Positions 25,007-54,491 of a stretch of 64,000 nt of DNA are shown here, piece after piece. Numbering within the stretch: position 1 is the stretch's first letter; the number at the start of each line of letters is the position of its first letter. The notes under the pieces were generated by a model. The model was not told where the DNA came from and did not search any database. It saw only the letters and a list, made by a program, of their open reading frames with translations. Location: contig NC_043007.1 of NCBI RefSeq assembly GCF_006345805.1, positions 53,320,001 to 53,384,000 of the forward strand, read 5' to 3'. Position numbers and translations under genes: made by a program. Source of the stretch: Octopus sinensis (taxonomy: Eukaryota).

Positions 25007-25049
25007 TTTCAGTACCGGTTTCGGTCATTTTGAGACCTTTTCAACTGTA
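25007..25049 (-). ncRNA. Hammerhead ribozyme, U3:A8 variant (inverted pLTR copy)
   Basis: Exact reverse complement of 34742-34784. Confidence 0.75.
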
Positions 25050-25925: not shown

Positions 25926-25927
25926 TT

Positions 25928-25938
25928 TGGTGACCCCG
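25928..25938 (+). promoter_or_regulatory. Primer-binding site complementary to tRNA-Trp 3' end
   Basis: TGGTGACCCCG, 2 nt after the LTR. Confidence 0.85.
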
Positions 25939-26042
25939 TAAAACGAATCGCGCTTCCCTGGAACCAGCTTCATCAACCGCGTCGAAGAATTACAGTTTGC
26001 ACATCACCAGCAACGAAGCAACTGAAAATTCCGACAAAAACA

Positions 26043-26918: not shown

Positions 26919-26956
26919 ACGCGACGGAAATTCCTGGTTCGCACCCACACAGTCGC
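26894..26956 (+). promoter_or_regulatory. Programmed -1 ribosomal frameshift signal (slippery heptamer plus candidate pseudoknot)
   Basis: G GGA AAC (26894-26900) lies in the gag frame and pol is in the -1 frame; stem CCAGGAATT/AATTCCTGG (26908-26916, 26929-26937); loop GCGAC can pair with GTCGC at 26952-26956. Confidence 0.85.
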
Positions 26957-29900
26957 CTGTTTTTCGTTTGCGATCGTGTAACAGGCACGCGTTTCCTGGT
27001 TGACACAGGTGCGGAAGTCAGCATCATCCCAGTCTCCAACACTTCTGGAAAAAGAAAAGAGACATCAGTCTGTCTTCAGGCAGTCAACCATTCACCCATT
27101 CCAACCTACGGTGAACAGTCCCTAACATTAAACATAGGACTACGCCGCACATTTCAGTGGGTATTCGTCGTCGCTAAACTGCCGACCCCTATCTTAGGAG
27201 CCGATTTCCTGCATCATTTCGGTCTCCTGGTAGACATAAAGAACAGACGACTTGTCGACACCACCACCAAGCTTACTGTGCGCGGTATAGCCGCTCGAAT
27301 GGACACAGTCAGCCCAACTGTAATGCTTACGACAACGACTCGGCACAGTTCCATCCTGAATGATTATCCAGATGTCGCCCGGCCAGTTTTTCATAACCAG
27401 CCGATAAAGCACGACGTTACCCACCACATCAAAACCAGCGGTCCACCTGTTGCTGCAAGGCCCAGAAGGTTACCACCTGATCGTCTCCAGGCCGTCAAGC
27501 GGGAATTCCAGCACATGCTCGACCTCGGAATCATCCGCGTTTCCAGCAGCAACTGGTCCTCGCCGATACACTGCGTCCCAAAAAAATCATCGACCGATTG
27601 GCGGGTTTGCGGCGATTATCGATCACTGAATAAAAGCACTATCAGTGATGCCTATCCGGTGCCTTTTCTTCAGGACTTTTCGAGCTCGCTGCATGGAGCT
27701 CGCATCTTTTCAAAAATCGACCTGGTGCGAGCATACAACCAAATCCCAGTCGAACCTGCAGACATCTCAAAGACAGCAGTGACTACACCTTTCGGAATGT
27801 TTGAATTCCTGCGTATGCCTTTCGGTTTACGAAACGCGGCACAGACATTCCAAAGGTTTATCGACATGGTGACTAGAGGTTTGCCTTTCGTCTATGCCTA
27901 CATAGACGACATACTCGTGGCCAGTAACTCGGACGAAGAGCATAATCAACACCTTCACCTGCTATTCGAACGTTTACGTAAATTCGGAATTGTTATCAAC
28001 CCTACTAAATGTTTGTTCGGAGTTGCTTCCCTTCATTTTCTCGGCCATATAGTCGATAAAAATGGAATTCGTCCCCTTCCCGAGAAAGTCAAGGCCATCG
28101 TGGATTTTCCACCACCCACATCTCTCCGCAAATTAAGGGAATATCTCGGTCTAGCGAATTTCTATCGACGGTTCGTGCCCCACCTCGCTGAAATAGCGCA
28201 ACCGCTCACGGATTTGCTACGTCAGCGAACCTGCAAAAACGCAGATATAGCTCTGACCGAAATCAACTCGTTTCTTTCGCTGCCCTGAAAAAAACGTTAT
28301 CTAGCGCTACCATGTTGGTTTATCCAAAACCAGACGCCCCACGATGTTTACTCGTTGATGCATCCGATTCCGGAATCGGAGGTGTGCTACAACAGCTTGT
28401 TGACGGTATATGGCAACCGTTGTCTTTCTTTTCTAAGCGGTTAAAACCCGCGGAAACCAAATACAGCACATTCAGTCGGGAATTATTGGCGGCATACCTG
28501 GCCGTTAAGCATTTCCGTCATATGCTAGAAGGTACCAATTTTGCCATATATACCGACCACAAGCCATTAGTATACGCATTTAACACCAAACCGGATCGCC
28601 ATTCGCCGAGAGAAATTCGTCACCTCGACTTCATATCGCAGTACACGACGGATATACGCCACATCAAAGGGGCGACCAACGTGGCAGCCGATGCACTTTC
28701 ACGTGCGCAGATCAATGCTATCCACACCACGTCTACAATTGATCTGGCACGTATAGCAGCTGACCAGGAGAATGACGAAGAACTTCTAAAGCTCCGGAAT
28801 TCGTCATCTCTGAAATTTCAGCATGTTCCACTACCATCATCCACAGCCCATATTGGTGTGATATTTCCACTGGTTACCAACGCCCTTATGTACCACAGAA
28901 ATATCGTCGAGAAGTTTTCTCCGCTCTACATTCTCTGTCACATCCTGGTATTCGCTCCACTCAAAAGCTAATATCGACCCGTTTTGTGTGGACCAGTATC
29001 AACAAGGATATCAGAGAATGGACCAAGTGCTGTGTTGCGTGCCAAAAAGCGAAAATCCACCGGCACATAAAATCACCAATCGGTTCATTTTCGCAGCCCG
29101 ATGCACGATTTCAGCACGTTCACATTGATATCGTTGGACCCCTGCCACCTTCGCAGAACTATTCATATTTGCTAACTTGCGTAGATAGGTTCTCGCGATG
29201 GCCCGAAGCCTGGCCCCTATCTGATATATCAGCAGAAACGGTCGCTAAAACGCTGATATCACAATGGGTTTCGCGTTTTGGCACACCCGCAACAATTACC
29301 ACCGACAGAGGACGTCAGTTCGATTCCCACCTTTTCACCGAGCTGACTCGTCTCCTCGGGTGTAAACACACCCGCACTACAGCTTACCACCCTGCAGCAA
29401 ATGGCATGGTGGAACGCTTTCACCGCCAACTCAAGGCATCTATAAAAGCAGCTCCAGACAGTTCTCACTGGTTGGAACATCTCCCTCTCATCCTCCTTGG
29501 AATTCGATCCACGATTAAGGAAGAACTGGGATATACTCCGGCCGAACTCGTTTATGGCACAACACTCACCTTACCTGGGCAGATGATCGAACCTGTTTCA
29601 CAAAACTTCCCTGACCCACAACAATATGTGCACCGATTACGAACATCCATGTCGCAAGTATCACCCTCAGGCCCCAGACAACAGAACGTCGTTTCACGTG
29701 TCCCAAAAGATATCAACACATGGACTCATGTCTTCGTGAGGAATGATGGGATACCCTCTCAACTTCAACCACCATATTCCGGGCCCTACAAGGTCATCAA
29801 AAGAGAACCCAAGTATTTCGTCCTCGATATTGGAGGTAAACGAAATACGGTCTCGATTGATCGTTTAAAAAAAGCTTTCATCGAGGAGGACTTACATTCA

Positions 29901-30059
29901 GTCCCCTCTTTTCCTCAAACAGACTCGGCAACTCCAGCGAACACCACAGATGCTGCACAACCCCGACACACCAAATCAGGAAGAACAGTTCGATGGCCAG
30001 CAAGGTTTGTGCAAGTTTTTCGGGTAAGTTCTGAACTCCTAACGTATCCATCTTCCTAA
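26894..30059 (+). CDS. Pol polyprotein (protease, RT, RNase H, integrase) with two single-base frameshifts
   Basis: [72 protein letters not shown]; frame shifts near 28260 and 28850. Confidence 0.93.
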
Positions 30060-30616
30060 TGAACACATAACTGCATCACCCACCCAGAGAAATCAAAGAG
30101 CATTTGTGTACGTAAAGAAAAAAAAAAATGAAAACAAAAACTGTCTGTATGAACTTTTACGGAACATTTCAAAATCGAACTTTGCCGATGAACATTTCTT
30201 TCATTTTTGCATGTACATATTTTTTGTTTTCTTTTCAAAATGTTTGCTTTCTCATAAATATATTTTTTTGCTAACTGTATATCCACACACATTTACAAAT
30301 CTTGTTCTCATGCGTGCTATCACTCGATTTTTTTTTCTCCACTGAAAGATACCATGTCTCTATTAGACCTCTAGTAGGTCGAGTAATCAATAGACGCACA
30401 TCTCTTTCAACGCGCCAACATAATTCTGCCTGGGCACATATACATATTGCCCACCATATAGCACATACAAATTGTAAACCTTTCATCCATATTTTTATCG
30501 TTCAATGTGTAAAAAAAATTTTTTTCTACATGCACACAATCAAAAAAAAAAAAAATAATAAAAATAATAATAATAATACATTTCCAATATCGTTCGATCT
30601 CTGTGGCTTTCTCACT

Positions 30617-30629
30617 AGAAGGGGGGTAG
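30617..30629 (+). promoter_or_regulatory. Polypurine tract
   Basis: AGAAGGGGGGTAG immediately before the 3' LTR. Confidence 0.85.
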
Positions 30630-31201
30630 TGTAAGAATTAGCACTTCCTTCTCAAAGCTTGGATTCGAAATCAGACCCAAGAATCATTGGTCGTAAAATA
30701 CCAATGCACAAAAAGGCGCGAAATCAGAATCTCTTTGTTCTGACAAAAAATGATGGATCGTCTCCCTTCGACCTCTGACCCGAGCAGGTCAGGCGAAGTT
30801 TAACAGGACGACCAGCGACCTACTGTACGCAATAAACTCTTGCGGTATATCTATTTTTCTGGCTATTTGAGATGTTATAAATAGAACGGAGAAATAGGTA
30901 TCTGGAGAGCCCGAACCAACGTTTAAGAGAACGTCACGCATTTATGAGGACGACGAAAGAATATTCAGAAAGGTGACTCTGTCATGCATGATTTACACAC
31001 ACGCACCATCAAACATATTCTGCTTTAATGTGTATCCTGTATTATGCATTCCTTTAATATGTATTATTTGCAACCACTATTTAATATGCATTTTGTACAA
31101 GCGATGTGTAACATTGCTTACAAATTGATGTAGTGATAATAAATCTTTAATTTATTACAAAGCACTTATGTATTTATTAATACATCCACGCATCCACTAC
31201 A
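30630..31201 (+). repeat. 3' LTR (572 bp)
   Basis: Matches the 5' LTR except for two small indel-type differences seen by eye. Confidence 0.97.
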
Positions 31202-31862
31202 CACCGATGAAGATATCAACGAAGAAATTCGCAAAATGACCCAAGGCCCAGATCAAGAGAAGTTCTCCAAACTATGGAAAGAGGACTGTGAAAAAGAAGA
31301 ACTAAAATCTCTCCAACGCTGGGAGAAAAGCGCCAGTTGGTTCTCAGACTATGAAGCCGTCTTTCAAACAGAGCACGCCTCCAACAACCCTTTCCAGAAA
31401 ATAAGAAAACCAAAACAACACCCAAACACCGATACACACCTGTCTAAAAGAATACAGGACCTAACCCTAACTCTGTAAGCAGCCAGCGTTACAATATCAG
31501 GAATACCCCCACTTCAAGCAGAGAAAGGATAAATCAACACCCACAGCATAGACACTGCAACCTTATCCCCACCCAAAAGAGTTACCAACGAAATCTCCGT
31601 CCCATCAACCGGTTAAACAACCATGCACAACAAACCCACACCACTTACAATGATTACCAACGAAGGCCTCCTAGAACACCACACCCGAATATGGGATATC
31701 GGATGCTCTCCTCAATACTGCTCCAAGACACACACACCATAAATCAAACAGGAGACCCCACATCAACAAAGAACAACTATATAATAGCTACCGTCCCAAC
31801 CACCGCATTCATTTTTTAGACCCAATACGCAAACACAGAGACACAAGATAGCACCAAACAAG

Positions 31863-34142
31863 CAGGAGGAACCAAAAGTAATAAAAATTATCAATCTAAC
31901 TCACAAGGAACTAACAGCAAACCAAATAAACATACTTTCCAAAGGACTCAAGTTTACACCCACCCCATAACACCCCAACTACAACGAAATGAAAGAAGAC
32001 ATCGCAGAATTCTGCAGAAAATTAAGACTTACTGAAGAGCTATACGATAAATACAACGAGGACGAATCGTTAGCCAGAAATAGGAGTAACTACACCCCCT
32101 CGAAAGGTAAGAACAAAACACTTGATGATTTCTGTGACCACATATCTAATTACCCATATCAACATATGCACAAACAAAAACACAAACCAAACTTCAGCAA
32201 AAAAGAATGGGCTGAGTTGAACAAATTAAAACAAGATAAAACAATAACAATCAAAGAGGCCGATAAAGGGAGTGCTGTTGTCTTAATGGATACGACATTT
32301 TACATAACTTTGGTACTTTCTATGCTGGAAGACACAACATACTATGAAAAGGCACAAAACTACAGTCAACAAAAAATAATGAGGGAACTAAAATTCATAT
32401 TAAACACATACAAAGCAGGGCTCACCGACAAAGAATATGATTATATGACCAATTTCACAAGTAAAACTAGCCAATTCTACGGTATACCTAAGATCCACAA
32501 AAGTGAAAAAATAAGCAACGCATGCAAGATAGCTACAGACAAAATAATTAAAGTCCCTAATCCTAATGACATCAAATTGAGACCCATAATAGCAGGTCCC
32601 GCATGAGAAACCCACCGCCTCAGTAACTTTTTAGACACCCTGTTAAAACCACTCCTCAAACATGTCAAAAGCTATATAAGGGACGACTTAGATATGCTCA
32701 ATCACCTACCGAATACTATAAACAAAAACACCATACTGGTATCCTTCGATGTAGTCAACCTCTACTCCAATATCCCCCACAACCTAGGACTAGAGGCAAT
32801 CCAATTCTGGCTAGAGAATCACGCCAACGAACTACCACACCGCATCAAAAAAGAATTCGTGATAGAAGGGGTTAAATTCATCCTGGAAAATAACTTCTTC
32901 GCCTTCAATGACAACTTCTACCGACAAAAATCGGGGACTGCAATGGGTACACGAATGGCCCCCTCCTTTGCCAACCTAGTCATAGGATACCTAGAGATCA
33001 GTCTGTATCGTAAGGTTCTAGAAAGATATGGCAGCCCTTTCTCCATCTACATAGAAAACAACTGGAAGAGATATCTAGATGACTGTTTCATTCTTTGGCA
33101 TAAAAATATAGAAAAACTCATAGAATTCCAGGAAATTTTAAACGGACTGGACGTAAACATCCAATTCACGATGGAATATAGCCAGCAACAACTCCCCTTC
33201 CTCGATATCCTCATTAAGAAAGCTAATAATATAATAGAAACAGACATATACTATAAGCCTACAGACTCTAAGCAATATCTTCCATTCAATTCATGCCACC
33301 CCAGACACACCAGGATGAATATCCCCTTCAATCTAGCAAAAAGGATATGCACTATAGTCTCTAACGCAAACACCAGAGACACACGACTACAAGAACTAAA
33401 AGATACCCTTATCACCAGGAACTATCCACCTTCACTTATTGACAAGTGCATTCAACGTGCCCTTCAACTTAACATCAAGGAACTGAGACATCCCAAATCA
33501 AAGAAAAACTTACAACCAAAAGCCTTACCATACATCTCCACACACAACCCTCTCAATAACGAAGCCTTCGGCAACATCCTCCACAACATACCCCTCCTAA
33601 AAAAAGACCACAGAATGAACACAATCCTCCAAACACACACGATCATAAAAAGCAAAAGACAGCCTAGATCCATGAAAAGTCTCCTAACACAAGCCCGAAT
33701 TCACTCTTCAACACAGAAGCCGACAGTAAAAAAATGTGGAAGACCCAATTGCGGGATATGCGACTATCTAATTGAGGGATCAGAGTTCTCCTTCAAACAT
33801 GGACAACGGTTTACAGTGAAAAGCAACTTCACATGTGCTTCGGAGAACCTAATATACTCATTAACCTGCTCCGGGTGTCAAGAGCAGTACATAGGCCAAA
33901 CAAAAAATGGTTTGCGTAAACGAATGGCCCTGCACAGATCCCAGATAAAAATTCCCCAAAACAGAAAAATAGCTTTTAGCCAACACATAGATACTTGCGC
34001 CAACAAAAAAACACCAAACTTCAGGATTTTCCCCCTCTACCAATTTAGGGACGATACAACCTCGAGACAACGAATAAGTAAAGAAAATCTCTTTATTACA
34101 AAATACAGGCCACTTCTTAACGGGTCTACGACAAACAATTAA
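31863..34142 (+). pseudogene. PLE RT plus GIY-YIG endonuclease reading frame with two in-frame stops
   Basis: LSKGLKFTPTP*(TAA 31968), IKEADKGSAVV, FYGIPKIHK, RPIIAGPA*(TGA 32604)ETHRLS, SFDVVNLYSNI, GTAMGT, RYLDDCF, CGRPNCGIC, LIYSLTCSGC..YIGQT; one frame throughout. Confidence 0.92.
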
Positions 34143-34249
34143 TATACCTCAACTTTAGAATAAAAGAAATATATACACACACAAATATTACATTCCATAG
34201 AATCCATTACTAATCAGCCCCATCACAGCTATACTTTCACCCATTCATA

Positions 34250-34415
34250 TTCTCCCTTCTCTGTTTTTTTCTTCTTCTTCCTCTTCTTCTTCATCATCAT
34301 CATTATCATCATCATCGTCGTCATCATCATCACCATCATCTTCTCCTTCTCCTTCTTCTTCATCATCATCATCATCAATATCGTCATCTTCTTCTTCTTC
34401 TACTTCTCCACCTTC
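34250..34415. repeat. (CTT)n/(CAT)n trinucleotide tract in the PLE 3' UTR
   Basis: Directly visible. Confidence 0.9.
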
Positions 34416-34741
34416 TACTCCTTAACCTTGTCACTAATGCCTTTCAGTATAACGCCTACGCAAATTCCATAAACAATTCCTGAATTGAACTGCGACTGCT
34501 GTCCGCCACTGACCATTCAAAATACGACCATCAAGGCATTCCCAGATTTCCCCACCCCCTCTCCACATCAGCCTTCTGCTTCTCCTACCCTACCAAGAAC
34601 TCACAACGACCTCGAACACACAAGTGCAAACAAGGGAGTCAGAGAAAGGCAGAATGCCACTTATATCTGAACACTACTATAGAAATATTCCTTTTAAAAA
34701 AACTTTTCTTCTAATTTTTCTAAATTTAATTATTTAATCGT

Positions 34742-34784
34742 TACAGTTGAAAAGGTCTCAAAATGACCGAAACCGGTACTGAAA
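34742..34784 (+). ncRNA. Minimal type I hammerhead ribozyme, U3:A8 variant
   Basis: CAG | TTGAAAA (34747-34753) | GGTC-tcaaaat-GACC | GAA | ACCGGT palindromic stem III | A (GUA triplet, cut after 34778) | CTG pairs with CAG. Confidence 0.75.
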
Positions 34785-34830
34785 GATTCACTATAAAATT
34801 ATCTTAGCATTTTCTATTTTTGACTTGTTT

Positions 34831-34871
<41 letters not shown>

Positions 34872-35143
34872 TGTCTATATATATGTCTATATATATGTAC
34901 ATATATGTATATATATATGTACATATATGTATATATATATGTATATATATGTATATATATGTGTATATATATATATATACATATACCTGTAAAATATTAT
35001 GAGACAATTATTCAATAGCCAAAATAAAACTTTGAGTGTTATCTTGAGTGTTATTTTACAGTTAAATTTCCACTATTTACATAATATTGAGGTCTCTTTC
35101 TTTTCTTAACGCACCAATATGTATATATATATATATTATATAT

Positions 35144-35197
<54 letters not shown>

Positions 35198-35198
<1 letters not shown>

Positions 35199-35467
35199 TT
35201 CCACTTATATACTTCGCTGGTCACAATGCTTTCGCATCGTTTTAGCCTTCGAATGACGCCACCCCGCTGGCTAAGCGAGCAGGCCAACAGAAGAAAGAGT
35301 GAGAGAAAGTTGTAGCGAAAGAGTACAGAAGGTACCGCCACCACCCCAGCCTCGTGGAGCTTTTAGGTGTTTTCGCTCAATAAACACTCACAACACCCGG
35401 TCTGGGAATCGAAACCACGATCCTACGACTGCGAGTCCGCTGCCCTAACCACTGGGCTATTGCGCCT

Positions 35468-35470
<3 letters not shown>
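35198..35470 (-). repeat. tRNA-derived SINE
   Basis: Minus-strand head TGGAGGCGCAATAGCCCAGTGG (A box) ... GTTTCGATTCC (B box), followed by a non-tRNA body between (TA)n and (CA)n tracts. Confidence 0.85.
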
Positions 35471-35502
<32 letters not shown>

Positions 35503-35508
35503 ATATAT

Positions 35509-35728
35509 ATTGTAGTGGCGGTTTATTTAATTTATATTAAAATTTTATGTATTGATTAAGTCTTTCCTTGTTTGTTTTGCAAAATAGTGGTTTTGTCTCG
35601 AATTAATATTATATATATATATATATAATATTAATTCGAGACAAAACCACTATTTTGCAAAACAAACAAGGAAAGACTTAATCAATACATAAAATTTTAA
35701 TATAAATTAAATAGACCGCCACTACAAT
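35509..35728. repeat. ~100-bp-arm palindrome of two tail-to-tail PLE termini around a (TA)n core
   Basis: Arms are reverse complements with one mismatch seen (GGTTTATT vs GGTCTATT). Confidence 0.92.
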
Positions 35729-35762
35729 CGTTTCATGTCTTCAAATGACATTCGTCAGGTGG
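35719..35762 (-). ncRNA. Canonical type I hammerhead ribozyme
   Basis: CCAC | CTGACGA | ATGTC-atttgaa-GACAT | GAA | AC-gatt-GT | A | GTGG. Confidence 0.85.
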
Positions 35763-35919
35763 TTTTCCGATTTTCAAATCAGTTTCAATTTATGAAGTAA
35801 ATATATATATATATATATATATAAATTCGGGGTGAGTACTTGATAATTGTAAGCACCTGTATATACCGTTTGGTGTAGAAGCTCCTTCTATAAAATAAAA
35901 TAATATATATATATATATT

Positions 35920-35959
<40 letters not shown>

Positions 35960-35971
35960 TTTATAGAAGGA

Positions 35972-36020
35972 GCTTCTACAGGACTAGAACTGTTTCATTC
36001 AAAAGAAATCATCAGGAAGC
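35972..36020 (-). ncRNA. Type I hammerhead ribozyme (weak stem II)
   Basis: GCTTC | CTGATGA | tTTC-tttt-GAAt | GAA | ACAG-ttctagtc-CTGT | A | GAAGC; second copy at 51849-51897. Confidence 0.75.
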
Positions 36021-36280
36021 TAGGTGACAAGAATGGTTTTGGCATTTATACATTTAGGCAGGTTTAAAGGGGTGGTGGGGGGGAGCGTTTTGGGGGTAGA
36101 CATCGCGCAAACTATCATTCTTAGGGGAAAGGAATCGGTGATAAAGTAGATAAAAGAATAAATAGAATAACAGAGTTTTAGGTAAATAAGGAGACTCTGA
36201 CTTATATATATATATAATATATATATATATATATACACATACACACACATGTATATATATACACATACACACACACATAC

Positions 36281-36332
<52 letters not shown>

Positions 36333-36911
36333 TATATATATATACATATACATATACGTACACATACACACATACATCCATATACACATGTACATATGCA
36401 CCCATTTACATACATCTACGTACCCGCCCATATCCATACTCATACATACACTCATATCTCTACACACATATATAAGAAAATATAAATGTAAATATAAACA
36501 CAAAAACAAATATAAAGGAGGATATACACCCCCATACTCACACGCTCACATATCTATATATATATATATATATATACACACACATATATATATATATATA
36601 CACACACATATATATATATATATACACACATATATACATACACATACATATGCATATACATGCACACACATACACACACGTTTCTTCCCTAATTTTAATT
36701 TTATCTTTATCTTTATTTTTATTTTGACCTCGACTCACCAGGCCAGCTCTCCCAAGGGAGCAAGCCTGGTCGGCCTAAAGACACCATTTATTGCCCTTCT
36801 CCCTTCCTTTCTATCTTTTTTCCACTGATACGAACACAAACACTCACACACGCACATCCACACACATGCACACTCATACACATACACAAACGCACGTGTT
36901 ATATTCATACA

Positions 36912-37304
36912 CTAGCAGTATCGCCCGGCGTTGCTCGGGTTGTAAGGGAAATAACTATATAAGCATTTTTAGAGAGTTATAGCCAAAAAATAGCAAAAAA
37001 AATGCATTAAAAATTGAAAAAAAATTAAGGTAAATTTTTTTTAAATCGTTGACACATCGTAGATATTTTTAGAGAGTTACTTCCCTTATATAAAAGCGAA
37101 AAAATGCATTAAAATGGAAAAATATGATGGTAAATTTTTTTTAAATCGTAGACTCATCGTAGACGCGCGCTAATACCCAGAAGGGCTCGATATAAATCAC
37201 GACTATAAGATACCCGCTTTTGGTTAAACTGCACCGCAAAATGTGGGAGTAATTACGAATGTAAATCGAAGGGACAGACACACAACTTCACTCTTATATA
37301 AAGA
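36912..37304 (-). mobile_element. Non-autonomous Helitron (393 bp)
   Basis: Minus strand A|TC...hairpin CCCGAGCAACGCCGGG...CTAG|T, inserted at an AT dinucleotide without TSD. Confidence 0.85.
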
Positions 37305-37599
37305 TGCTTTTTTTTTCAGTCATAGAGTTAGATTTATGAAGGTCTTCAGTAGAAAATCCTCGAATTCTGACTTGCTGCTTGATATAATGAAATTCGTATC
37401 AATTTTTTGTCAGAATTACAAATTTTGAAAACACAACAGAACAAATTTCGGAAAAAAATCTCCCATAATTCACGGAATTAAAATTACACTTCGTTTTTGT
37501 ACAAAACTGTATTTGAAGTGTTTACGAAGTATAATACGTGTTTTCACGAATGTACTAAAGAGATTTACTCTGATATTCTCATTTAAATATGAATAGGTA

Positions 37600-37628
37600 A
37601 ATTCGGGCGGTTTGGTAACGAAAGGGTT
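37600..37628. mobile_element. Possible piggyBac-type MITE terminus
   Basis: GGGCGGTTTGGTAACGAAAGGGTTTTA resembles a reverse CCC-start TIR next to a degraded TTAA; partner end not found. Confidence 0.3.
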
Positions 37629-37797
37629 TATATAAGTGTCGTCTGTCTATACATAAACACTGTTTCATAGTTTCAGTTTAGTCTTCCTCAAATCACTGTC
37701 GCTAATTTACTCTCTTCCAAGAACATTTTCACTCACTGTTATCTGTTAGCTTCCCATACATTTTACTCAGCGTGATAGACAGAAACAAATATTACAT

Positions 37798-38069
37798 TTA
37801 CTTTCATTTTATTCGTTGCCCACTGTGTGTGTGCGTTTGCGTGTAGTGTAAACCAGACTAAGAAAAGCATTTGACACACACACCAGAATGTGAGTTTTCT
37901 GTAAATTTTGCTTAATTGGAGTTTAAATTTTAAAAACTGGACCTGGCATGACGCGATGCATTGTACTCTTAAAACTGCTAGGTAAATTGTAATTGAAGAA
38001 ATCCTATATTGTAGATTTCTATACTCCCAAAGGGAGGCAGCTAAAATCTGCCTTTTATAATAAGAGATA
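37798..38069. repeat. 272-bp direct repeat, second copy at 41276-41547
   Basis: TTACTTTCATTTTATTCG...ATAAGAGATA, nearly identical at both sites. Confidence 0.92.
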
Positions 38070-38138
38070 TATATATACATATATATATATATATACATAA
38101 TATACATATATATACATATATATACATATATATATATC

Positions 38139-38169
<31 letters not shown>

Positions 38170-38170
38170 C

Positions 38171-38202
<32 letters not shown>

Positions 38203-38274
38203 CATATGTAGATATATTATACATATATATATATACGTATATATATACATATATATATATACATATATTACATA

Positions 38275-38306
<32 letters not shown>

Positions 38307-38372
38307 CATATATACATATATATACATATTATATATATATAATATAATATATATTACATTATATATATATAC

Positions 38373-38403
<31 letters not shown>

Positions 38404-38466
38404 CATATATATATATACATATATTATATAATACATATAATATATACATATATATATATATATAAC

Positions 38467-38499
<33 letters not shown>

Positions 38500-38842
38500 C
38501 ATATATATTATATACATATATATATCATATATATATATACATATATATATGTATATATATATATATACATATATATATACATATATATAATATATGTATA
38601 TATGTATATATATATATATACATACATATATATATACATATATAGTATATATATACATATACTAACAATATATATAATACATATTATATATACATAATAT
38701 AATATACATATATATATACATATATATATATACATATATATATATACATATATATACATATATATTATACATACTATCTATAATATTTACTTATATATAT
38801 AAATATATATATATACATACATATATATACATATATATATAC

Positions 38843-38875
<33 letters not shown>

Positions 38876-38881
38876 CATATA

Positions 38882-38928
<47 letters not shown>

Positions 38929-39032
38929 CATATATATTATATACATATATATATACATATATATATATACATATATATATATATACATATATATAATATA
39001 TACATATAAATATATACATATAAATATATATC

Positions 39033-39065
<33 letters not shown>

Positions 39066-39120
39066 CATAGATATATAATACATATATATATAACATACAT
39101 ATATATATACATACATATAT

Positions 39121-39163
<43 letters not shown>

Positions 39164-39358
39164 TACATATATACACATACACATATATACATATATATAC
39201 ATATATATATATATAATACATACATATATATATACACATACACATATATACATATATATACATACATTATATATATACATACATATATATATATACATAC
39301 ATATATATATACATATATATATATATACATATATATACATACATATATATATACATAC

Positions 39359-39390
<32 letters not shown>

Positions 39391-39413
39391 ACATATATAT
39401 ATATATATATACC

Positions 39414-39460
<47 letters not shown>

Positions 39461-39490
39461 CATATATATATATATACATATATATATATA
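38066..39490. repeat. ~1.4-kb degenerate (TA)n/(TACATA)n microsatellite
   Basis: Directly visible; source of the Y/I-rich spurious ORFs. Confidence 0.97.
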
Positions 39491-39492
39491 CA

Positions 39493-39882
39493 CTAGCAGT
39501 ATCGCCCCGCGTTGCTCGGTTTGTAAGGGAAATAATTATATAAGCATTTTTAGAGATGTAAAGTATAATAGCCATCTCAATATGGCTAACCACAAAGGGG
39601 GAGGGTGTTACTGTAGCTTTTTACGTTCTGAGATTTAATAATAATTTTAGAGAGTTGCTTCCCTTATATATGTCAAAAATGGATTAAAAATGGGAAAAAT
39701 TGATGGTAAATTTTTTAAAAATCGTATACTCATCGTAGACGCGCGCTAATACCCAGACGGTCTCGATATGAATCACGACTATATGATACCCGGTTTTGGT
39801 TAAACTGCACCGCAAAATGTGGGAGTAGTTAGGATCTAAATCGTAGGAGACGGACACACAACCTCACTTTTATATATAAAGA
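39493..39882 (-). mobile_element. Non-autonomous Helitron (390 bp), relative of 36912-37304
   Basis: Same CTAG/hairpin 3' end and TCTTTATATA 5' end; shared internal ATCGTAGACGCGCGCTAATACCCAG block. Confidence 0.85.
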
Positions 39883-40051
39883 TTTCCTCTATTTACATAA
39901 TATGAGGTCTCTTTCTTTCTTTTGTTATCTTACTGTTTTTAACCATATACATAATATATATATATATATATATATAAATTATATATAGTTACAGAGATGT
40001 ACTTGCATAGCAAGTGACTTGATCTGAGATCGTGTGCTGGAACGAAAACAG

Positions 40052-40305
40052 TTGCAGCGTTGAAGGTGTTTATAAGCCATTTAAGAAACACAAAAACCGT
40101 TAGATTCACTTCAACATTTAATTTATTTGTCAAAATATTTTCATCGCTTTGAGACCGCGACCTGTTAGCACGATATTTTTGTCAGTGAACAGGTCGCGGT
40201 CTCAAAGCGACGAAAATATTTTGGCAAATTAAATTTAAATGTTGAAGTGAATGTAACGGTTTTTGTGTGTTTCTTAATGGCTTACAAACACCTTCCACGC
40301 TGCAA
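40052..40305. repeat. ~115-bp-arm imperfect palindrome of PLE pseudo-LTR sequence, 21-nt spacer
   Basis: 40052-40166 versus 40188-40305, reverse-complementary with a few mismatches. Confidence 0.9.
40178..40228 (+). ncRNA. Minimal type I hammerhead ribozyme, G3:C8 variant
   Basis: TTTGTCA | GTGAACA (40185-40191) G | GTCGC-ggtctcaaa-GCGAC | GAA | AATATT palindromic stem III | T | TGGCAAA pairs with TTTGTCA. Confidence 0.65.
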
Positions 40306-40404
40306 TATATATATACACACATATATATATATGTATGTATGTATGTATGTGTGTATATGTGTATGCATGTATGTGTGTGTGTGTGCGTGTCTGTGCTTGT
40401 GATT

Positions 40405-40612
40405 GTCCTCACCCACGCTTGACAACGAATGTTGGTTTGTTTACATCCCTGTCACCTAGTGGTTTGACAAAGGAAACAGATAGAATAAGTACAATGCTTA
40501 CAAAAATAAAAGTGGAGTTGATTCATTAAACTACAATTCTTCAAGGCATTGCCCCAGCATGGCCACAGACCAATGGCTGGAAAAAGCAGAAGAATAAAAG
40601 AATACATTCTCT
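40405..40612 (+). repeat. Degenerate SINE 3' half
   Basis: Similar to 54530-54712 (..GATAGAATAAGTAC..CCAGCATGGCC..AATAAAAGAATA). Confidence 0.7.
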
Positions 40613-40659
40613 GCTTTGGTCAAGGCATGAGAAAGCTTGAGTTTACATGAGAAGGCCTA

Positions 40660-41035
40660 ACAGACCTGGTAGAAACAGCAGCCAAATCTCCCTCAAATTA
40701 CACCTTACTGTCTTATCTATGTATATATATATATGAGCCAATGAGGGGGACCTCTACATGGTAGCTAGACCTGGTAGAAATAGCAGCCAAATTTCCCCCA
40801 AATCACACCTTACTGTCTTATCTATGTATATATGTATGTATGAGCCTATGAGGGAGACCCCTACATGGCAGCTAGACCGGGTAGAAATAGCAGCCAAATT
40901 TCCCCCAAATCACACCTACTGTCTTATCTATGTATATATGTATGTATGAGCCTATGAGGGAGACCCCTACATGGCAGCTAGACATGGTAGAAATAGCAGC
41001 CCAATCTCCCTCAAATCACACCTTACTGTCTTATC
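40660..41035. repeat. Minisatellite, ~107-bp unit, ~3.6 copies
   Basis: Units start at ACATGG 40756, 40863 and 40969, with a partial unit from 40660. Confidence 0.93.
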
Positions 41036-41683
41036 TTTCTGCTACTTGGATATAGGTGTATATTCGTCGTAAAAAACTTTCCTATCACACACTCACGCAC
41101 ACGCACACACACACACACACACCACCCTCACACACACACACACGCGCGCACAACCCACACACACCCACTCACACACACGCACGTTAGCTTACAATTTTAT
41201 TATATATTTGCGTGTGTATGTGTGAAAGAGGAAGTGGGAAGCAGAGTGAAAGAATCACTCACTACAGTAAGTCAATTACTTTCATTTTATTCGTTGCCCA
41301 CTGTTGTGTGCGTTTGCGTGTGGTGTAAACCAGACTAAGAAAAGCATTTGACACACACACCAGAATGTGAGTTTTCTGTAAATTTTGCTTAATTGGAGTT
41401 TAAATTTTAAAAACTGGACCTGGCATGACGCGATGCATTGTACTCTTAAAACTGCTAGGTAAATTGTAATTGAAGAAATCCTATATTGTAGATTTGTATA
41501 ACTCCCAAAGGGAGGCAGATAAAATTTGCCTTTTATAATAAGAGATACATAAGTGTACCGACTTTCACATAAACGTACACATAACTATGTACACACAAAA
41601 CCACATACACATATATATACATATACATATATATACACATATATATACATACACATATATATATATACACATACACGCACACA

Positions 41684-44600
41684 CATTCTTTTTGCTTTCC
41701 TCCAACAGTGAAGATAGTAATGAGAGACGATATTGCTACATATAGCCTCTTGCCAGACGTTTTGTCATAGACAAAACGACGATAAAAATTTTTTTTTTTT
41801 TCTTTTTTTTTCTTTTTCTTTAAAAAGTTCCTTCCTCAGCGTTCTTGTGTCAATCAATCCGTAACTTATGTTGGCCGCATAGTATATCAGAATGGCTGCG
41901 TATTTGAGGGGTCACCAGTAAAACGGGATCACATGTGGTCGCATCATATAGATAATACAATCGCACGCGATCCCATTCTTGTTGAGTTAGACAAACCATT
42001 TATACATGCGGCACAATAGAACATAAGGGATTGACAACAAGTCACTGTTTGAGAGGCAAGATAAGATTTTATTTACAATGAAGTTAAGGTTGGAAGTGTA
42101 TGGGAGCATGCAACACGTGTTTGTGTCTGTGTGTTAGTGTGCGACAGAACAATGAATGTGGTTGACATAGAAAAGTACCTGATGGTGGAAGATAGCAGTC
42201 TTTGGTTGTTGAGCGTACATTGGCATAGTGGTTAAGGAACCCTTGTATCATTTTGTTGTTTAGCGCTGTCTCTGAAGCTAGTTCTTACAAGAACTAAAGA
42301 CAGGTAATTGATTTACTGTTTATGAGGTACACGACGTGTAATAGTTTGTAGTGATCCTACAACGGCGCGCGTTCGCGCACCGTCCATTTGTATTTCGCGC
42401 GTGTTGGTGCCTTCACCAAGGCACAGAAAGGAAGGGCCCTCTCGCGCATGCACGAACCACCGGAAGCACGACCCTGGCCAAGGCAGGGGGATCGTAGAAC
42501 GTTTGACACTAGCAGCAGCAAGCGGCGACTTGGGACCCAGCGATTGAAGCGGCGGTCACGCATATATATTCTCTCCGTTGATAGCAGCAGTCGGCCGAAT
42601 GCCTTTAACCAAATTGTTGCCGACCACATTCAACTTCCCTGTTCGACGCCATCTTGACCCCTTTCTGGTTTAGCGGCTGGACATTGTAAATATTACAATC
42701 TATTAACTTCAGCCTTGCGCGCCCAGAATCAAGGACATCAGATAACACACTTATTGTTATGTTACCAAGAAAGAGAATAAGTAGTTATATATTTCAACGT
42801 CTGCGTCTTGTTGTTTCTGACTAGTAGAATTCTGGACAGTAAAGCAACGGCTAGTGAGTGATTGCTTTCTTGTACCCCGAAAGTACAAGATCAGATATTC
42901 ACATCACTCACTAAGTTCGTTTCACTGGTGACCCCGACGTGATTCTGGTCTAAAACCAGAGATCACTTATCAACAAAAAAAAAAATCCAGTTTTTCTGCG
43001 AAGTCGGAACACGATTAACTCTACGCATTCATCTTTCGACGATTTGTTTCCGGCCACCACAAACAGTTGTAGAAGGAGCCTCTTTCTTATTCTACAGCCA
43101 TGATGACGGACGCCATCATCTATTCGATGCCTCTTCTCCACCTTCGTCATCATCATCGTCGTCTGTCTACTTCACGTCGTCGCTATCTTCGTCGCCATCA
43201 TCACTAAGAACGATGTTGTCCCAAGTCCACTACAGTCGCCTTCCTCCACCACCGTCGCCTTTCAACACCGTCGACCTCCACAAGATGTACATAGCAACTC
43301 GCGGAACTTTAGCGTGCACGCTGTTTTGTGCATATGCACACCAAGAATTCACAGCCCAGCACTATCTATGAGATTTCTTCTGTTCCAGTTAACCTGTCAC
43401 AGCATTGAAGCCACAACCGCTACACGATATGTGTTCAATCGGCATCTGCATTTGTGATCTCAACATTCTGTTACAGAACGAACTGCTATTTGTACATCAG
43501 GCTATTACAGACTGGTAAATTAACTCTTGTCTGAAATAGCACATGAGAGACATTTTTCTATGCGCTGTATTTTTTGTATTTTGCTCGCATTCACCTTGTA
43601 TGTATTTCTGTCGCACACACGTACACACACATAAATGCTCTCTCTCACATACATACGTCACACATGCTTTTCTCGCTTGTTTTTTTCCATGCTGAATTTG
43701 CTTTTGTGGACACCCTCTTTCTATAGACCTAGCGGTCACGTATACATAGAGAGGGTTGTTTGTCCATTATAACGCGCCAGCATGTCATACTTTTGTTCCT
43801 ATACGAACGAAGCATATAATCGCTTAACCACTGGCATATTCATTTGCTGTTTTTCGGTCTGGCAAGCTCTATTGCATTTCATGCGCCTCTTGCTCCGCAC
43901 GTGTACTTGCCTTGTTTTTTGCAACACGTTTGCAGTCGCTTAGTTCTTCCCGACTCATAGGACGTCGGATGTTCACATGCGCTGCGCCATGTTTAGGCGT
44001 AATTATTTTTCCCTGTTAGACCACTGTTGGTCACGTAATTAACAGAAAATTATCTGTGTCGCGCATCACACCAGCATGTTTGCACTTTTGCCTTTTGTGT
44101 TACTAGCGAGCTTCTGTCAATTCCATTTCCTCTCCTGCAGCAATTGATTTAACTGCTATTTCGCAGGATCAACTACCTTTAGAGAAGTTGGATTTTTAAT
44201 TTCGCCTAGGTTCAATAACTGTGAGTTCTGCCTTTTCTTCCGCTCCCTTCAGCGGAAGGTTCTATACTTTGTGACGTATACACTTTCATGCATGCACTCT
44301 TGATTTTGCTCATTGAGTATTTTTTCTCTTTTTCCTTTAGTAAATTTCTTGTGTATGTTATAAATTTTGCCATTATATTATTGTGTGCTATTTGGTTATC
44401 TGGTGTCCACCTTGAGTTTTGCAGTCACTACAATAAGTTTCCTTTCGTGCGTACGCACTGGAGGGGAGCCTGTAGTGATCCTACAACGGCGCGCGCTCGC
44501 GCACCGTCCATTTGTATTTCGCGCGTGTTGGTGCCTTCACCAAGGCACAGAAAGGAAGGGCCCTCTCGCGCATGCGCGAACCACCGGAAGCACGACCCTG

Positions 44601-45661
44601 GCCAAGGCAGGGGGATCGTAGAACGTTTGACCACTAGCAGCAGCAAGCGGCGACTTGGGACCCAGCGATTGAAGGCGGCGGTCACGCATATATTCTCTCC
44701 GGTTGATAGCAGCAGTCGGCCGAATGCCTTTAACCAAATTGTTGCCGACCACATTCAACTTCCCTGTTCGACGCCATCTTGACCCCTTTCTGGTTTAGCG
44801 GCTGGACATTGTAAATATTACAATCTATTAACTTTCAGCCTTGCGCGCCCAGAATCAAGGACATCAGATAACACACTTATTGTTATTGTTACCAAGAAAG
44901 AGAATAAAGTAGTTATATATATTTCACGTCTGCGTCTTGTTGTTTCTGACTAGTAGAATTCTGGACAGTAAAGCAACGGCTAGTGAGTGATTGCTTTCTT
45001 GTACCCCGAAAGTACAAGATCAGATATTCACATCACTCACTAAGTTCGTTTCAAGTTCAATATCAAGATGTTGTGTCTCGGAGCTGACATCTGTTGAATC
45101 GCTTGTTGCGTTTATCTTTCTCTTGATATGAATATACTCCAGATATGTTAACTGTAGCCGTTTTTTCCGTGGTGAGATTTCACGCAAACAATATGAGTTG
45201 GTTTTGTAGCCATCTTATGTACGAGCTAAAGCTTCGTAGGTAGCGACGGAGTTGGTGATGCCGTTATGTCTGGTTATATGGTTTCCGACCAAGACCTTAG
45301 AAGGTCTTAAGCCGACAGACGAGCTCTGTGGTCAGAGACTTAGCTCTGAAAAGAACTAAAAGCCTAAGACGAATATTTGTCTGAAAAACCTTCTTTATAT
45401 AAGGTTTATACGGCTCCAAATGAACTTCAGAAATGGGAAGCTGTGATTGGCTGCTTGGAACTATGGCGCGAAAATAAGCGGAGGAAATCGCGTCAAGTGA
45501 TAACCAGCGGTGCGAACGTAGTAGAGACCAACGTGCCAGCCAATCGAATTAGTGTTTACAACAATGTTGAACTAGCCGAAGATGTTTGTTATCTCAAACG
45601 AGATCATTCTTTTTGCTTTCCTCCAACAGTGAAGATAGTAATGAGAGACGATATTGCTACA
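41684..45661 (-). mobile_element. Non-autonomous LTR element B (~1-kb 5' LTR, ~177-bp internal region, 3' LTR truncated to 57 bp), carrying element A inside its 5' LTR
   Basis: TGTAGCAATATC start at 45661 and again at 41740 (57-bp shared block 45605-45661 / 41684-41740); minus-strand PBS TGGTGACCCC at 41917-41908; purine-rich GGCAAGAGG before the second LTR. Confidence 0.7.
42347..45053 (+). mobile_element. Non-autonomous LTR element A (complete, non-coding interior)
   Basis: LTRs 42347-42924 and 44471-45053 (TG...CA, highly similar); TSD AGTT (42343-42346, 45054-45057); 19-nt tRNA-Trp PBS 42926-42944; PPT GGAGGGGAG at 44460; no coding ORF. Confidence 0.93.

Positions 45662-53287: not shown

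Positions 53288-53339
<52 letters not shown>

Positions 53340-54439: not shown

Positions 54440-54491
<52 letters not shown>

What the first reader, a model, noticed from the sequence alone, without database searches (positions are those of the whole stretch)
30359..44049. Conserved structured RNA motif in the 3' UTRs of two different LTR elements
Seen three times: outer stem - A - GACC - 4 to 7 nt - GGTC - 8-nt RMGTAWWY - outer stem, at 30359-30394 (autonomous Gypsy) and at 43713-43755 and 44013-44049 (non-autonomous element A). The outer stems differ in sequence but keep pairing (TCTATT/AATAGA, CTCTTTCTAT/ATAGAGAG, CTGTT/AACAG). A second motif follows each copy 15-20 nt later (AACGCGCCAACAT 30409, AACGCGCCAGCAT 43771, ATCACACCAGCAT ~44065). 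The surrounding sequences are otherwise unalignable by eye. Inference: a cis-acting RNA element (packaging, dimerisation, export or translation signal, or an unknown ribozyme) retained and duplicated by a parasite that lost all coding capacity. I know no family name for it.
Basis: partly seen in the sequence, partly recalled or inferred. Interest (0 to 1): 0.8.

Follow-up and report, generated by a model that had tools for sequence, protein, structure and literature searches.

The report
Shared RNA hairpin in octopus retrotransposons
A roughly 65-base hairpin with a conserved core sits in the 3' non-coding part of an octopus Gypsy retrotransposon and occurs twice in an unrelated-looking, protein-less LTR element; it is probably an RNA signal the parasite must keep in order to be copied, but only three independent versions could be found.

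Summary
The window is Octopus DNA. The autonomous element is a CsRn1-clade Gypsy (tRNA-Trp primer site, CHCC Gag). Element A is a bona fide non-coding LTR element with the same primer site. Apart from that site, the motif region is the only part of the two elements that aligns above noise. Six more Gypsy-family copies from O. sinensis and O. vulgaris carry the motif at the same place. Three things favour a plus-strand RNA hairpin: the outer stems pair with different sequences, the apical loop varies in length, and all four within-family changes at paired sites are wobble-compatible on the plus strand. The evidence is thin, though. There are only three independent lineages, and part of the apparent covariation can be read as a one-base register shift. 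Folding z-scores are modest. The motif is absent from the nearest relatives (63-67% integrase identity) and from Argonauta. It matches no Rfam family, and nothing suggests a ribozyme. My best reading is a cis-acting RNA handle, for Gag recognition/packaging or else export, retained by a parasite. That makes it a new motif of a known kind, of moderate interest.

The parts
30359..30394 (+). Motif copy 1 (core): TCTATT / A / GACC / TCTAGTA / GGTC / GAGTAATC / AATAGA. It lies in the Gypsy 3' non-coding region, 300 nt after the pol stop and 236 nt before the 3' LTR.
   Evidence: (53.2 bits)
30343..30409 (+). Extended hairpin around copy 1. The outer helix is TGAAAGA/TCTTTCA, with a 3-bp helix TGT/GCA between it and the core.
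30409..30421 (+). Second box m2, AACGCGCCAACAT.
43713..43755 (+). Motif copy 2 (core) in element A: CCCTCT-TT-CTAT / A / GACC / TAGC / GGTC / ACGTATAC / ATAG-AGAGGG.
   Evidence: z = -3.2; 39 bits
43707..43766 (+). Extended hairpin around copy 2; additional outer helix TGGACA/TGTCCA.
   Evidence: (flank-shuffle p = 0.002)
43771..43783 (+). Second box m2, AACGCGCCAGCAT.
44013..44045 (+). Motif copy 3 (core) in element A: CTGTT / A / GACC / ACTGTT / GGTC / ACGTAATT / AACAG.
   Evidence: z = -2.3; 48.9 bits
44065..44077 (+). Second box m2, decayed form ATCACACCAGCAT (both CpG read CpA).
25351..31201 (+). Autonomous CsRn1-clade Gypsy element. LTRs are 25351-25925 and 30630-31201 (99.3% identical), ending TG...CA, with a 4-bp target duplication CACC. 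The tRNA-Trp primer site is at 25928-25939 and the polypurine tract at 30617-30626. gag/pol is broken into four ORFs (26043-30059).
42347..45053 (+). Non-autonomous LTR element A. LTRs are 42347-42924 and 44471-45053 (97.8% identical), ending TG...CA, with target duplication AGTT. The 18-nt tRNA-Trp primer site is at 42926-42943 and the polypurine tract at 44460-44468. The 1546-bp interior has no ORF matching a protein family.

Best explanation
The motif is a cis-acting structure of the plus-strand (genomic) RNA of a group of Octopus CsRn1-clade Gypsy retrotransposons. It has four parts. (1) An apical 4-5-bp helix GACC/GGUC is closed by a loop of free sequence and length. (2) Below it is a 1 x 8 asymmetric internal loop with an invariant A on the 5' side and an invariant GUA on the 3' side. 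(3) Below that are one to three closing helices whose sequence is free but whose pairing is kept. (4) A CGCGCC-containing box follows 14-19 nt downstream. The conserved unpaired bases are the likely contact surface for a factor supplied in trans. Element A makes no protein and must borrow Gag, reverse transcriptase and integrase from an autonomous relative. It has therefore kept, and doubled, this signal together with the tRNA-Trp primer site and the polypurine tract, while everything else drifted beyond recognition. I commit to recognition of the genomic RNA by the CHCC-type Gag (selection for encapsidation, possibly with dimerisation) as the most likely role. The next most likely is a host-factor element for export, stability or localisation of the unspliced RNA. 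What is shown: the three copies, their common architecture, their position and orientation, the shared primer site, the lack of other homology, and the plus-strand-compatible substitutions. What is inferred: that the region is transcribed as part of genomic RNA, that it folds this way in vivo, that selection keeps it, and what binds it.
For: Three copies of one architecture occur on the sense strand of two LTR elements. The motif region is the only internal homology between them: whole-region SW is 63 against 36 +/- 4.7, 0/200. LTRs, leader and PPT regions are at noise level, and only the 11-nt primer site is otherwise shared. On the structural alignment 98% of cells pair. Four of the six outer-stem pairs show changes on both sides, only 2-4 of 500 shuffles do as well, and slid controls give 28-44% paired. 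The apical loop varies (7, 4 and 6 nt) while GACC/GGTC is fixed. Shuffling only the flanks around a fixed core gives p = 0.058, 0.002 and 0.36, and Fisher's method (my arithmetic) combines these to about 0.003. Six further Gypsy-family copies from O. sinensis and O. vulgaris have the motif at the same place. Among the seven family copies the four variable paired sites (30357, 30376, 30380, 30397) all stay paired through G.U on the plus strand, whereas they would be A.C mismatches on the minus strand. About half of the changes at unpaired and flanking sites are transversions. The host element carries the CHCC Gag knuckle and tRNA-Trp primer site of the CsRn1 clade (PMC2582038).
Against: There are only three independent lineages. 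The Gypsy/copy-2 'covariation' can be explained by loss of one T and one A, because both share TCTAT...ATAGA. That leaves one clean compensatory pair (A-T to G-C in copy 3). The structure was derived from these same sequences. Folding z-scores are modest, and copy 3's outer helix is no better than shuffles. The 3-bp helix that carries two of the four wobble changes comes from the minimum-energy fold of one copy only. One of the four changes is C to T at a CpG (30380), so it may be plain decay. The motif is absent from the closest other Gypsy lineages (63-67% integrase identity, L003-L005) and from the Argonauta relative. No further element-A-like copy turned up in about 90 kb of additional cephalopod and related sequence. 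No expression, binding or mobility data exist.
Confidence: 0.5

Rival explanations
1. The motif is a host-factor RNA element for nuclear export, stability or localisation of the unspliced RNA, in the manner of the constitutive transport element of simian type-D retroviruses or the MusD transport element. It would not be a Gag-binding packaging signal. This is a sub-case of the structured-RNA reading and differs from the best explanation only in what binds.
For: The position is right: the 3' non-coding interior upstream of the 3' LTR, where the MusD element also lies (PMC4588558). The conserved bases sit in an asymmetric internal loop between helices of free sequence, and the parasite has two copies. 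Conservation between two lineages whose LTRs no longer align fits a slowly evolving host partner at least as well as a fast-evolving Gag.
Against: There is no sequence or Rfam match to any known transport element. The motif is confined to one genus as far as sampled, which is odd for a host-factor site. The resemblance to the transport element is recalled from memory, not tested.
Confidence: 0.18
2. The island has no present function. It is residual homology from a common ancestor or from an old recombination between co-packaged RNAs. Palindromic character is retained by chance and by the A/T-rich, repeat-prone sequence.
For: The sample is small. A register shift explains part of the covariation, z-scores are modest and copy 3's flanks are at chance. 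Box m2 of copy 3 has lost both CpGs. The Gypsy-family 3' region is fairly well conserved throughout, not only at the motif. The motif is absent in nearest relatives.
Against: It is the single alignable island besides the primer site in elements that are otherwise diverged to noise. The stem is fixed while the loop is free in both length and sequence. All three lineages keep the 1 x 8 loop geometry. Four of four paired-site changes are wobble-compatible. Two diverged copies are kept within one small parasite.
Confidence: 0.22
3. The motif is a DNA-level element, such as a transcription-factor site, enhancer or insulator inside the transcribed non-coding region, as with the repeated Su(Hw) sites in Drosophila gypsy.
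For: There are invariant short words (TAGACC, GGTC, GTA, CGCGCC), an inverted-repeat core, and repetition in element A.
Against: Half-site spacing varies (4-7 nt). The outer arms keep complementarity, not sequence. Wobble-type changes are tolerated only if read as plus-strand RNA. All nine copies are in one orientation relative to the element.
Confidence: 0.08
4. The motif is a small self-cleaving ribozyme, or a primer-related tRNA-Trp mimic.
For: Retroelements in this very window carry ribozyme relics (a hammerhead-like match beside the Penelope-like element). The inner helix GACC/GGUC, plus AC in the two element-A copies, equals base pairs 1-4 and nucleotides 73-74 of tRNA-Trp, the primer of this clade.
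Against: No Rfam ribozyme family matches at E <= 10. No catalytic-core-like conserved junction is present. Overall similarity or complementarity to tRNA-Trp is not significant (p = 0.03-0.6, six tests). The Gypsy copy reads GGUCGA, not GGUCAC.
Confidence: 0.04

Closest known systems
MusD transport element (MTE) of the mouse MusD retrotransposon, and the ETn elements that MusD mobilises
   Same: It is a structured cis-acting RNA in the non-coding interior next to the 3' LTR of an LTR retroelement (PMC4588558). From general knowledge, protein-less ETn elements share the terminal internal regions with MusD and depend on its proteins.
   Different: The MTE is about 400 nt with many stem-loops, a kissing interaction and a pseudoknot, and it belongs to a betaretrovirus-like element. 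The motif here is a single hairpin of about 65 nt plus a box, in a Metaviridae-type element of a mollusc. There is no sequence similarity and its function is untested.
Constitutive transport element of simian type-D retroviruses, and related elements of intracisternal A particles
   Same: It lies in the 3' non-coding region. Its conserved bases sit in asymmetric internal loops flanked by helices, and the recognition unit is duplicated (recalled from the literature, not tested here).
   Different: No Rfam or sequence match. In that element the two loops lie within one long hairpin, whereas here the two copies are 300 nt apart and occur only in the parasite. Binding to an export factor is unknown.
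Retroviral and retrotransposon packaging (Psi) signals
   Same: They are hairpins with exposed purines recognised by the Gag zinc knuckle, and they must be present in any RNA that is mobilised in trans.
   Different: Known packaging signals lie mostly in the 5' leader; this motif is 3'. The CHCC Gag of the CsRn1 clade has no characterised RNA target.
LINE/SINE partners that share a 3' stem-loop (for example eel UnaL2/UnaSINE1), and non-autonomous pararetroviruses that share non-coding regulatory sequences with a partner (PMC5491270)
   Same: A non-coding parasite keeps just the cis-acting RNA or region that the partner's machinery recognises. The rest of the sequence is unrelated.
   Different: These are different element classes with different machinery: target-primed reverse transcription, or pararetroviral replication. 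Here the true autonomous partner of element A is not identified, because its LTRs do not match the Gypsy in the window.
Retrozymes (non-autonomous LTR elements that carry hammerhead ribozymes)
   Same: They are protein-less LTR elements with a small conserved structured RNA, mobilised by Gypsy elements.
   Different: No hammerhead or other ribozyme signature is found, and the motif is in the interior, not in the LTRs.

Membership tests
Any described RNA family (Rfam 15, 4227 models, including hammerhead, HDV-like, twister, pistol and hatchet ribozymes and retroviral cis-elements) | Covariance-model match at or above the gathering score, or at least E <= 10, at the motif | tested here: not met
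   No match in the window at gathering thresholds. Of the 139 matches at E <= 10 in 29500-45500, none overlaps 30340-30430, 43700-43790 or 44000-44090.
CsRn1 clade of Ty3/Gypsy elements (the host of copy 1) | Primer-binding site complementary to tRNA-Trp | tested here: met
   TGGTGACCCCGT at 25928-25939. Element A carries 18 nt, TGGTGACCCCGACGTGAT, identical to the reverse complement of the 3' end of a tRNA-Trp(CCA) that ARAGORN accepts. The feature is named in PMC2582038.
CsRn1 clade of Ty3/Gypsy elements (the host of copy 1) | Gag with a CHCC signature, CX2HX9CX3C, in place of CCHC | tested here: met
   The gag ORF ends ...[18 protein letters not shown].... Pfam finds DUF7041 and no zf-CCHC. 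The signature is as given in PMC2582038.
Non-autonomous LTR retrotransposon (LARD/TRIM-type), for element A | Two LTRs with TG...CA ends, a target-site duplication, a primer site after the 5' LTR, a polypurine tract before the 3' LTR, and no gag/pol | tested here: met
   The LTRs are 97.8% identical, with TGTAGT...GTTTCA ends and an AGTT duplication. The primer site is at 42926-42943 and GGAGGGGAG at 44460-44468. The interior has only short ORFs of at most 80 aa. One 164-aa ORF runs from the interior into the 3' LTR. These ORFs were not scanned against Pfam one by one.
Autonomous/non-autonomous partnership between this Gypsy and element A | Similar LTRs (integrase and promoter recognition) and shared internal ends | tested here: not met
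   LTRs, leader and PPT-proximal regions align no better than shuffles. Only the primer site and the motif region are shared. Element A's partner is therefore most likely another, unsampled Gypsy lineage that carries the same motif.
Structured RNA under selection (generic test) | Significant covariation over many independent sequences | tested here: inconclusive
   Five distinct rows but three independent lineages. 98% of cells pair, four pairs have double changes, and 2-4 of 500 shuffles do as well. The structure was derived from the same sequences and a register shift is an alternative. Four of four within-family paired-site changes are wobble-compatible.
Constitutive-transport-element-like export element | Binding of an NXF1-type export factor and rescue of an export-dependent reporter | not testable with these tools
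   Only position and loop architecture resemble it, and that resemblance is recalled from memory.
Self-cleaving ribozyme | Site-specific self-cleavage and a conserved catalytic core | not testable with these tools
   No known core was recognised. Cleavage can only be tested at the bench.

The most novel reading that the evidence does not exclude
The apical helix is a deliberate mimic of the acceptor end of tRNA-Trp, the replication primer of the whole CsRn1 clade. GACC/GGUC equals base pairs 1-4, and in the element-A copies it is followed by the discriminator A and C74. Together with the CGCGCC box it would recruit or position the primer tRNA or its synthetase from the 3' end of the genomic RNA. 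This would be a 3'-sited counterpart of the tRNA-like element near the HIV-1 primer site and of the bipartite primer site of yeast Ty3. If so, it would be a previously unseen way for a non-coding parasite to compete for the primer.
Probability: 0.04. Interest if true: 0.7.

Novelty: new member of a known kind. Interest (0 to 1): 0.4.

Why it matters
Cis-acting RNA signals of invertebrate LTR retrotransposons are almost uncharted, and the RNA target of the unusual CHCC Gag of the CsRn1 clade is unknown. A short hairpin that an autonomous element and a protein-less element share, when nothing else but the primer site is shared, gives a concrete and testable candidate for that target. It could also serve as a sequence tag for working out which non-autonomous elements parasitise which Gypsy lineages in cephalopod genomes, about half of which are repeats. 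If it is instead a host-factor export element, it would be the first of its kind described for a mollusc retroelement. It does not bear on any long-standing open question, and its known range is one genus.

Tried and rejected
1. Rfam at gathering thresholds and at E <= 10 found nothing at the motif. The many miRNA 'hits' are A/T-rich palindromes and microsatellites.

About a third are one conserved bacterial coding region (62-nt span) and the rest are scattered. None scores with the covariance model at E <= 1.

3. The same pattern in IMG/VR gave 22 chance hits, the best 22.6 bits against 39-53 bits for the real copies.

   - Six gave near-identical Gypsy-family copies.
   - Of the two O. bimaculoides loci, L002 has an assembly gap over the 3' region, while L009 is truncated with unrelated downstream sequence and also holds N gaps.
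   - Three relatives at 63-67% identity and one Argonauta relative lack the motif.

5. Extra copies in about 90 kb of additional cephalopod and related sequence: none beyond the expected ones.

6. Derivation from, or complementarity to, tRNA-Trp is not significant overall.

7. Long-range complementarity of the loop, bulge or box to the rest of each element gave only 7-9-nt matches at chance frequency, and these are not conserved between elements.

8. Homology of the hairpin with the 82-nt repeats of the L003-L005 lineage: the 62 nt upstream of their CGCGCC boxes do not align with the Gypsy or element-A units (p = 0.2-0.9).

9. Reading box m2 as a start codon or splice site is inconsistent between copies (sequence inspection).

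10. I did not search spurious ORFs of element A in the protein database. No Octopus hit in the first search came from a read-assembly source, so a return was unlikely.

Full report
**What the window is.** The integrase ORF at 28986-30059 is 98-100% identical to uncharacterised proteins of Octopus sinensis, and its close relatives come from O. vulgaris and O. bimaculoides. So the window is octopus genomic DNA, and it is dense with mobile elements: a LINE, a Penelope-like element, Helitron-like helicase ORFs and several LTR elements.

**The two host elements.** A self-comparison of the window gives two LTR pairs, 25351-25925 / 30630-31201 (99.3%) and 42347-42924 / 44471-45053 (97.8%).

- **The Gypsy element.** The first pair brackets gag, protease, reverse transcriptase, RNase H and integrase, broken into four ORFs. 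It has TG...CA ends, a 4-bp duplication CACC, a primer site TGGTGACCCCGT two bases after the 5' LTR, and a polypurine tract AGAAGGGGGG before the 3' LTR. Its Gag ends in CX2HX9CX3C, and its primer site is complementary to tRNA-Trp.
- **Element A.** The second pair brackets 1546 bp without any convincing ORF. It has TG...CA ends, a duplication AGTT, an 18-nt tRNA-Trp primer site and a polypurine tract. Element A is therefore a genuine non-autonomous LTR element of the same broad clade.

**The observation.** All three copies read as described. A pattern made from the copies proves little, so I ran two independent tests.

- Smith-Waterman alignment of the full Gypsy 3' non-coding region (570 nt) against the full interior of element A (1546 nt) scores 63. 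Dinucleotide shuffles give 36 +/- 4.7 (maximum 53 in 200), and the reverse complement gives 41. The best path runs through copy 1 and copy 2.
- LTR against LTR, leader against leader and PPT region against PPT region all score at noise level. A short-word BLAST finds only the 11-nt primer site and A-runs.

The motif region is therefore the one island, beside the primer site, that these two elements share. A corollary follows. With unalignable LTRs, the Gypsy in the window is probably not the element that mobilises A. The motif would then be common to at least two Gypsy lineages.

**More copies.** I used all twelve contig look-ups on integrase relatives, with short flanks so that no full element was fetched. 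Six further members of the same Gypsy family carry the motif at the same distance from the pol stop. Four are from O. sinensis (L001, L006, L007, L131) and two from O. vulgaris (L130, L132). The covariance model scores them at 50-53 bits. Of the two O. bimaculoides loci, one has an assembly gap exactly there and the other is truncated.

Three relatives at 63-67% integrase identity, from an ENA metagenome assembly of unknown host, and one Argonauta hians relative lack the motif by pattern, by alignment and by the model with filters off. No further copy appears in the rest of the window, nor in about 90 kb of other cephalopod and related sequence. Pattern scans of JGI metagenome contigs and of IMG/VR returned only chance matches, one group being a conserved bacterial gene. 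As far as I could sample, the motif is confined to the genus Octopus.

**Is it a structure?**

- **Covariation.** On a five-row alignment (three Gypsy variants, copy 2, copy 3), the two-helix structure pairs in 98% of cells, against 28-44% when the 3' partners are slid. Four of the six outer-stem pairs change on both sides, and only 2-4 of 500 column shuffles do as well.
- **Caveats.** There are three independent lineages, and the structure was read off these sequences. The Gypsy and copy 2 share TCTAT...ATAGA, so their 'covariation' may be the loss of one T on the 5' strand and one A on the 3' strand. That is itself a paired event that keeps the 1 x 8 loop. Still, it leaves only one classical compensatory substitution, A-T to G-C in copy 3.
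- **Loop and outer helices.** The apical loop differs in sequence and length (7, 4 and 6 nt) while GACC/GGTC is invariant. Each copy also lies at the tip of a longer hairpin whose outer helices are unrelated in sequence: TGAAAGA/TCTTTCA; CCCTCT/AGAGGG plus TGGACA/TGTCCA; and an A/U helix.
- **Flank shuffles.** Shuffling only the flanks around a fixed core gives p = 0.058, 0.002 and 0.36, which Fisher's method combines to about 0.003.
- **Energies.** The minimum free energies of the cores are modestly better than shuffles (z = -1.0, -3.2, -2.3). The reverse strands fold about as well, as expected for hairpins.

**Which strand?** Seven Gypsy-family copies show eight variable sites in or at the edge of the 67-nt hairpin. 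Four are at paired positions, and all four keep the pair through G.U on the plus strand:

| Site | Change |
|---|---|
| 30357 | U.G / C-G |
| 30376 | A-U / G.U |
| 30380 | C-G / U.G |
| 30397 | C-G / U.G |

On the minus strand these would be A.C mismatches. About half of the changes at unpaired and flanking sites are transversions. With that spectrum a random change at a paired site would be compatible about one time in four. Four of four therefore corresponds to p of roughly 0.004, or 0.06 if only transitions are allowed. The sample is small. Two of the sites sit in a 3-bp helix taken from one copy's minimum-energy fold, and one is a CpG. Even so, this is evidence independent of the three-lineage comparison, and it points to plus-strand RNA.

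**What it is not.**

- No Rfam family matches, at gathering score or at E <= 10. That includes the ribozyme classes.
- It is not derived from, or extensively complementary to, tRNA-Trp. The apical helix does equal the first four base pairs of that tRNA's acceptor stem, and in the element-A copies it is followed by A and C as in the tRNA. I keep this as a low-probability lead.
- The loop, bulge and box show no conserved long-range complement elsewhere in the elements.
- A DNA-level binding site does not fit the variable spacing, the sequence-free but complementary arms, or the wobble changes.

**How it most likely works.** Any RNA mobilised in trans by an LTR element's proteins must carry a promoter, a primer site, a polypurine tract, integrase-recognised ends, and whatever lets the RNA leave the nucleus and be chosen by Gag. 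Element A has kept exactly the recognisable primer site, a polypurine tract and this hairpin, in two copies. I therefore read the hairpin as a cis-acting signal on the genomic RNA. Its invariant unpaired bases (the 5' A, the GUA of the 8-nt strand, perhaps the CGCGCC box) would be presented by helices whose sequence is free, and read by a trans-acting factor.

My estimates are as follows.

| Reading | Probability |
|---|---|
| Selected plus-strand RNA structure acting in cis (all roles together) | about 0.5-0.6 |
| - Gag (CHCC) recognition, i.e. packaging or dimerisation | about 0.3 |
| - host-factor element for export, stability or localisation | about 0.2 |
| - primer-related mimic or ribozyme | a few per cent |
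| No function (residual homology) | about 0.2 |
| DNA-level element | about 0.1 |

**Comparison with what is known.** The kind is familiar. The MusD transport element lies next to the 3' LTR (PMC4588558). Type-D retroviruses carry a transport element in the same region. LINE/SINE pairs share a 3' stem-loop. Non-autonomous pararetroviruses share non-coding regulatory sequences with a partner (PMC5491270). The motif itself belongs to none of these by sequence or model. It is much smaller than the MusD element and sits 3' rather than in the leader where most packaging signals lie. It belongs to a clade whose Gag has no known RNA target. I therefore rate it a new member of a known kind.

**Verdict.** The structured-RNA reading is the best available, but it rests on three lineages and a handful of substitutions. 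The claimed breadth (molluscs and other invertebrates) has no support, and the ribozyme option has none. Interest is moderate (0.4): it is a neat, testable handle on parasite-host relations among octopus retrotransposons, not a surprise for the field.

Noticed in passing
window 31989-34142 (+), 34733-34797 (+), and 24949-25088 / 34703-34842: There is a Penelope-like element (reverse transcriptase plus GIY-YIG ORFs). Downstream of it lies a degenerate hammerhead-like match (HH9, 22.9 bits against a gathering score of 52; the core reads UUGAAAA instead of CUGAUGA). The match lies inside a 140-nt stretch that recurs, inverted and 100% identical, just upstream of the Gypsy. The Gypsy and the Penelope-like element are thus bracketed by an inverted duplicate.
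   Followed up: partly
L003:2683 and 2764; L004:2677 and 2760; L005:2682: The Gypsy lineage at 63-67% integrase identity lacks the hairpin. It does carry one or two AAAATT-CGCGCC-CA(CA)T boxes in its 3' non-coding region, within repeats of about 82 nt. The box resembles the second motif (AACGCGCCARCAT), but the 62 nt upstream do not align with the octopus units. The box may be the more widely shared part, or this may be coincidence.
   Followed up: partly
window 30366-30382, 43726-43739, 44019-44034: The apical helix GACC/GGUC equals base pairs 1-4 of the acceptor stem of tRNA-Trp, the primer of both elements. In the two element-A copies the next bases are A and C, as in the tRNA (GGUCAC). That stretch is also complementary to GUGACC inside the primer-binding site. 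Overall similarity to the tRNA is not significant.
   Followed up: partly
window 30381-30388: In the Gypsy copy the 8-nt strand GAGUAAUC can form a 2-bp mini-hairpin closed by a GNRA-type GUAA loop. Copy 3 also reads GUAA; copy 2 reads GUAU.
   Followed up: no
window 35509-35728: A 220-nt near-perfect (99%) palindrome, A/T-rich, produces strong but spurious plant and animal microRNA matches on both strands. It looks like a foldback or MITE-like element.
   Followed up: no
window 61043-61243 and 61275-62716: A fragment 78% identical to part of element A's LTR (a solo LTR or a relative of A) lies next to PIF1-like helicase ORFs of a Helitron-like element.
   Followed up: no
L002:2204-3233 and L009:2810-3117: Both O. 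bimaculoides loci fetched for this Gypsy family contain runs of N. In L002 the run covers the 3' non-coding region. The current assembly of that species therefore cannot be used to test conservation of the motif at those loci.
   Followed up: yes
window 52251-56371: There are extensive arrays of a 53-nt tandem repeat with higher-order structure (several blocks at 52375-52832, 53597-54082 and 54857-56371).
   Followed up: no
L007:1501-6335, L130:1501-41764, L132:1501-5497: NCBI gene models in O. sinensis and O. vulgaris splice fragments of this Gypsy integrase into multi-exon 'uncharacterised protein' genes, one spanning 40 kb. These are likely annotation artefacts of transposon-derived exons.
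   Followed up: no
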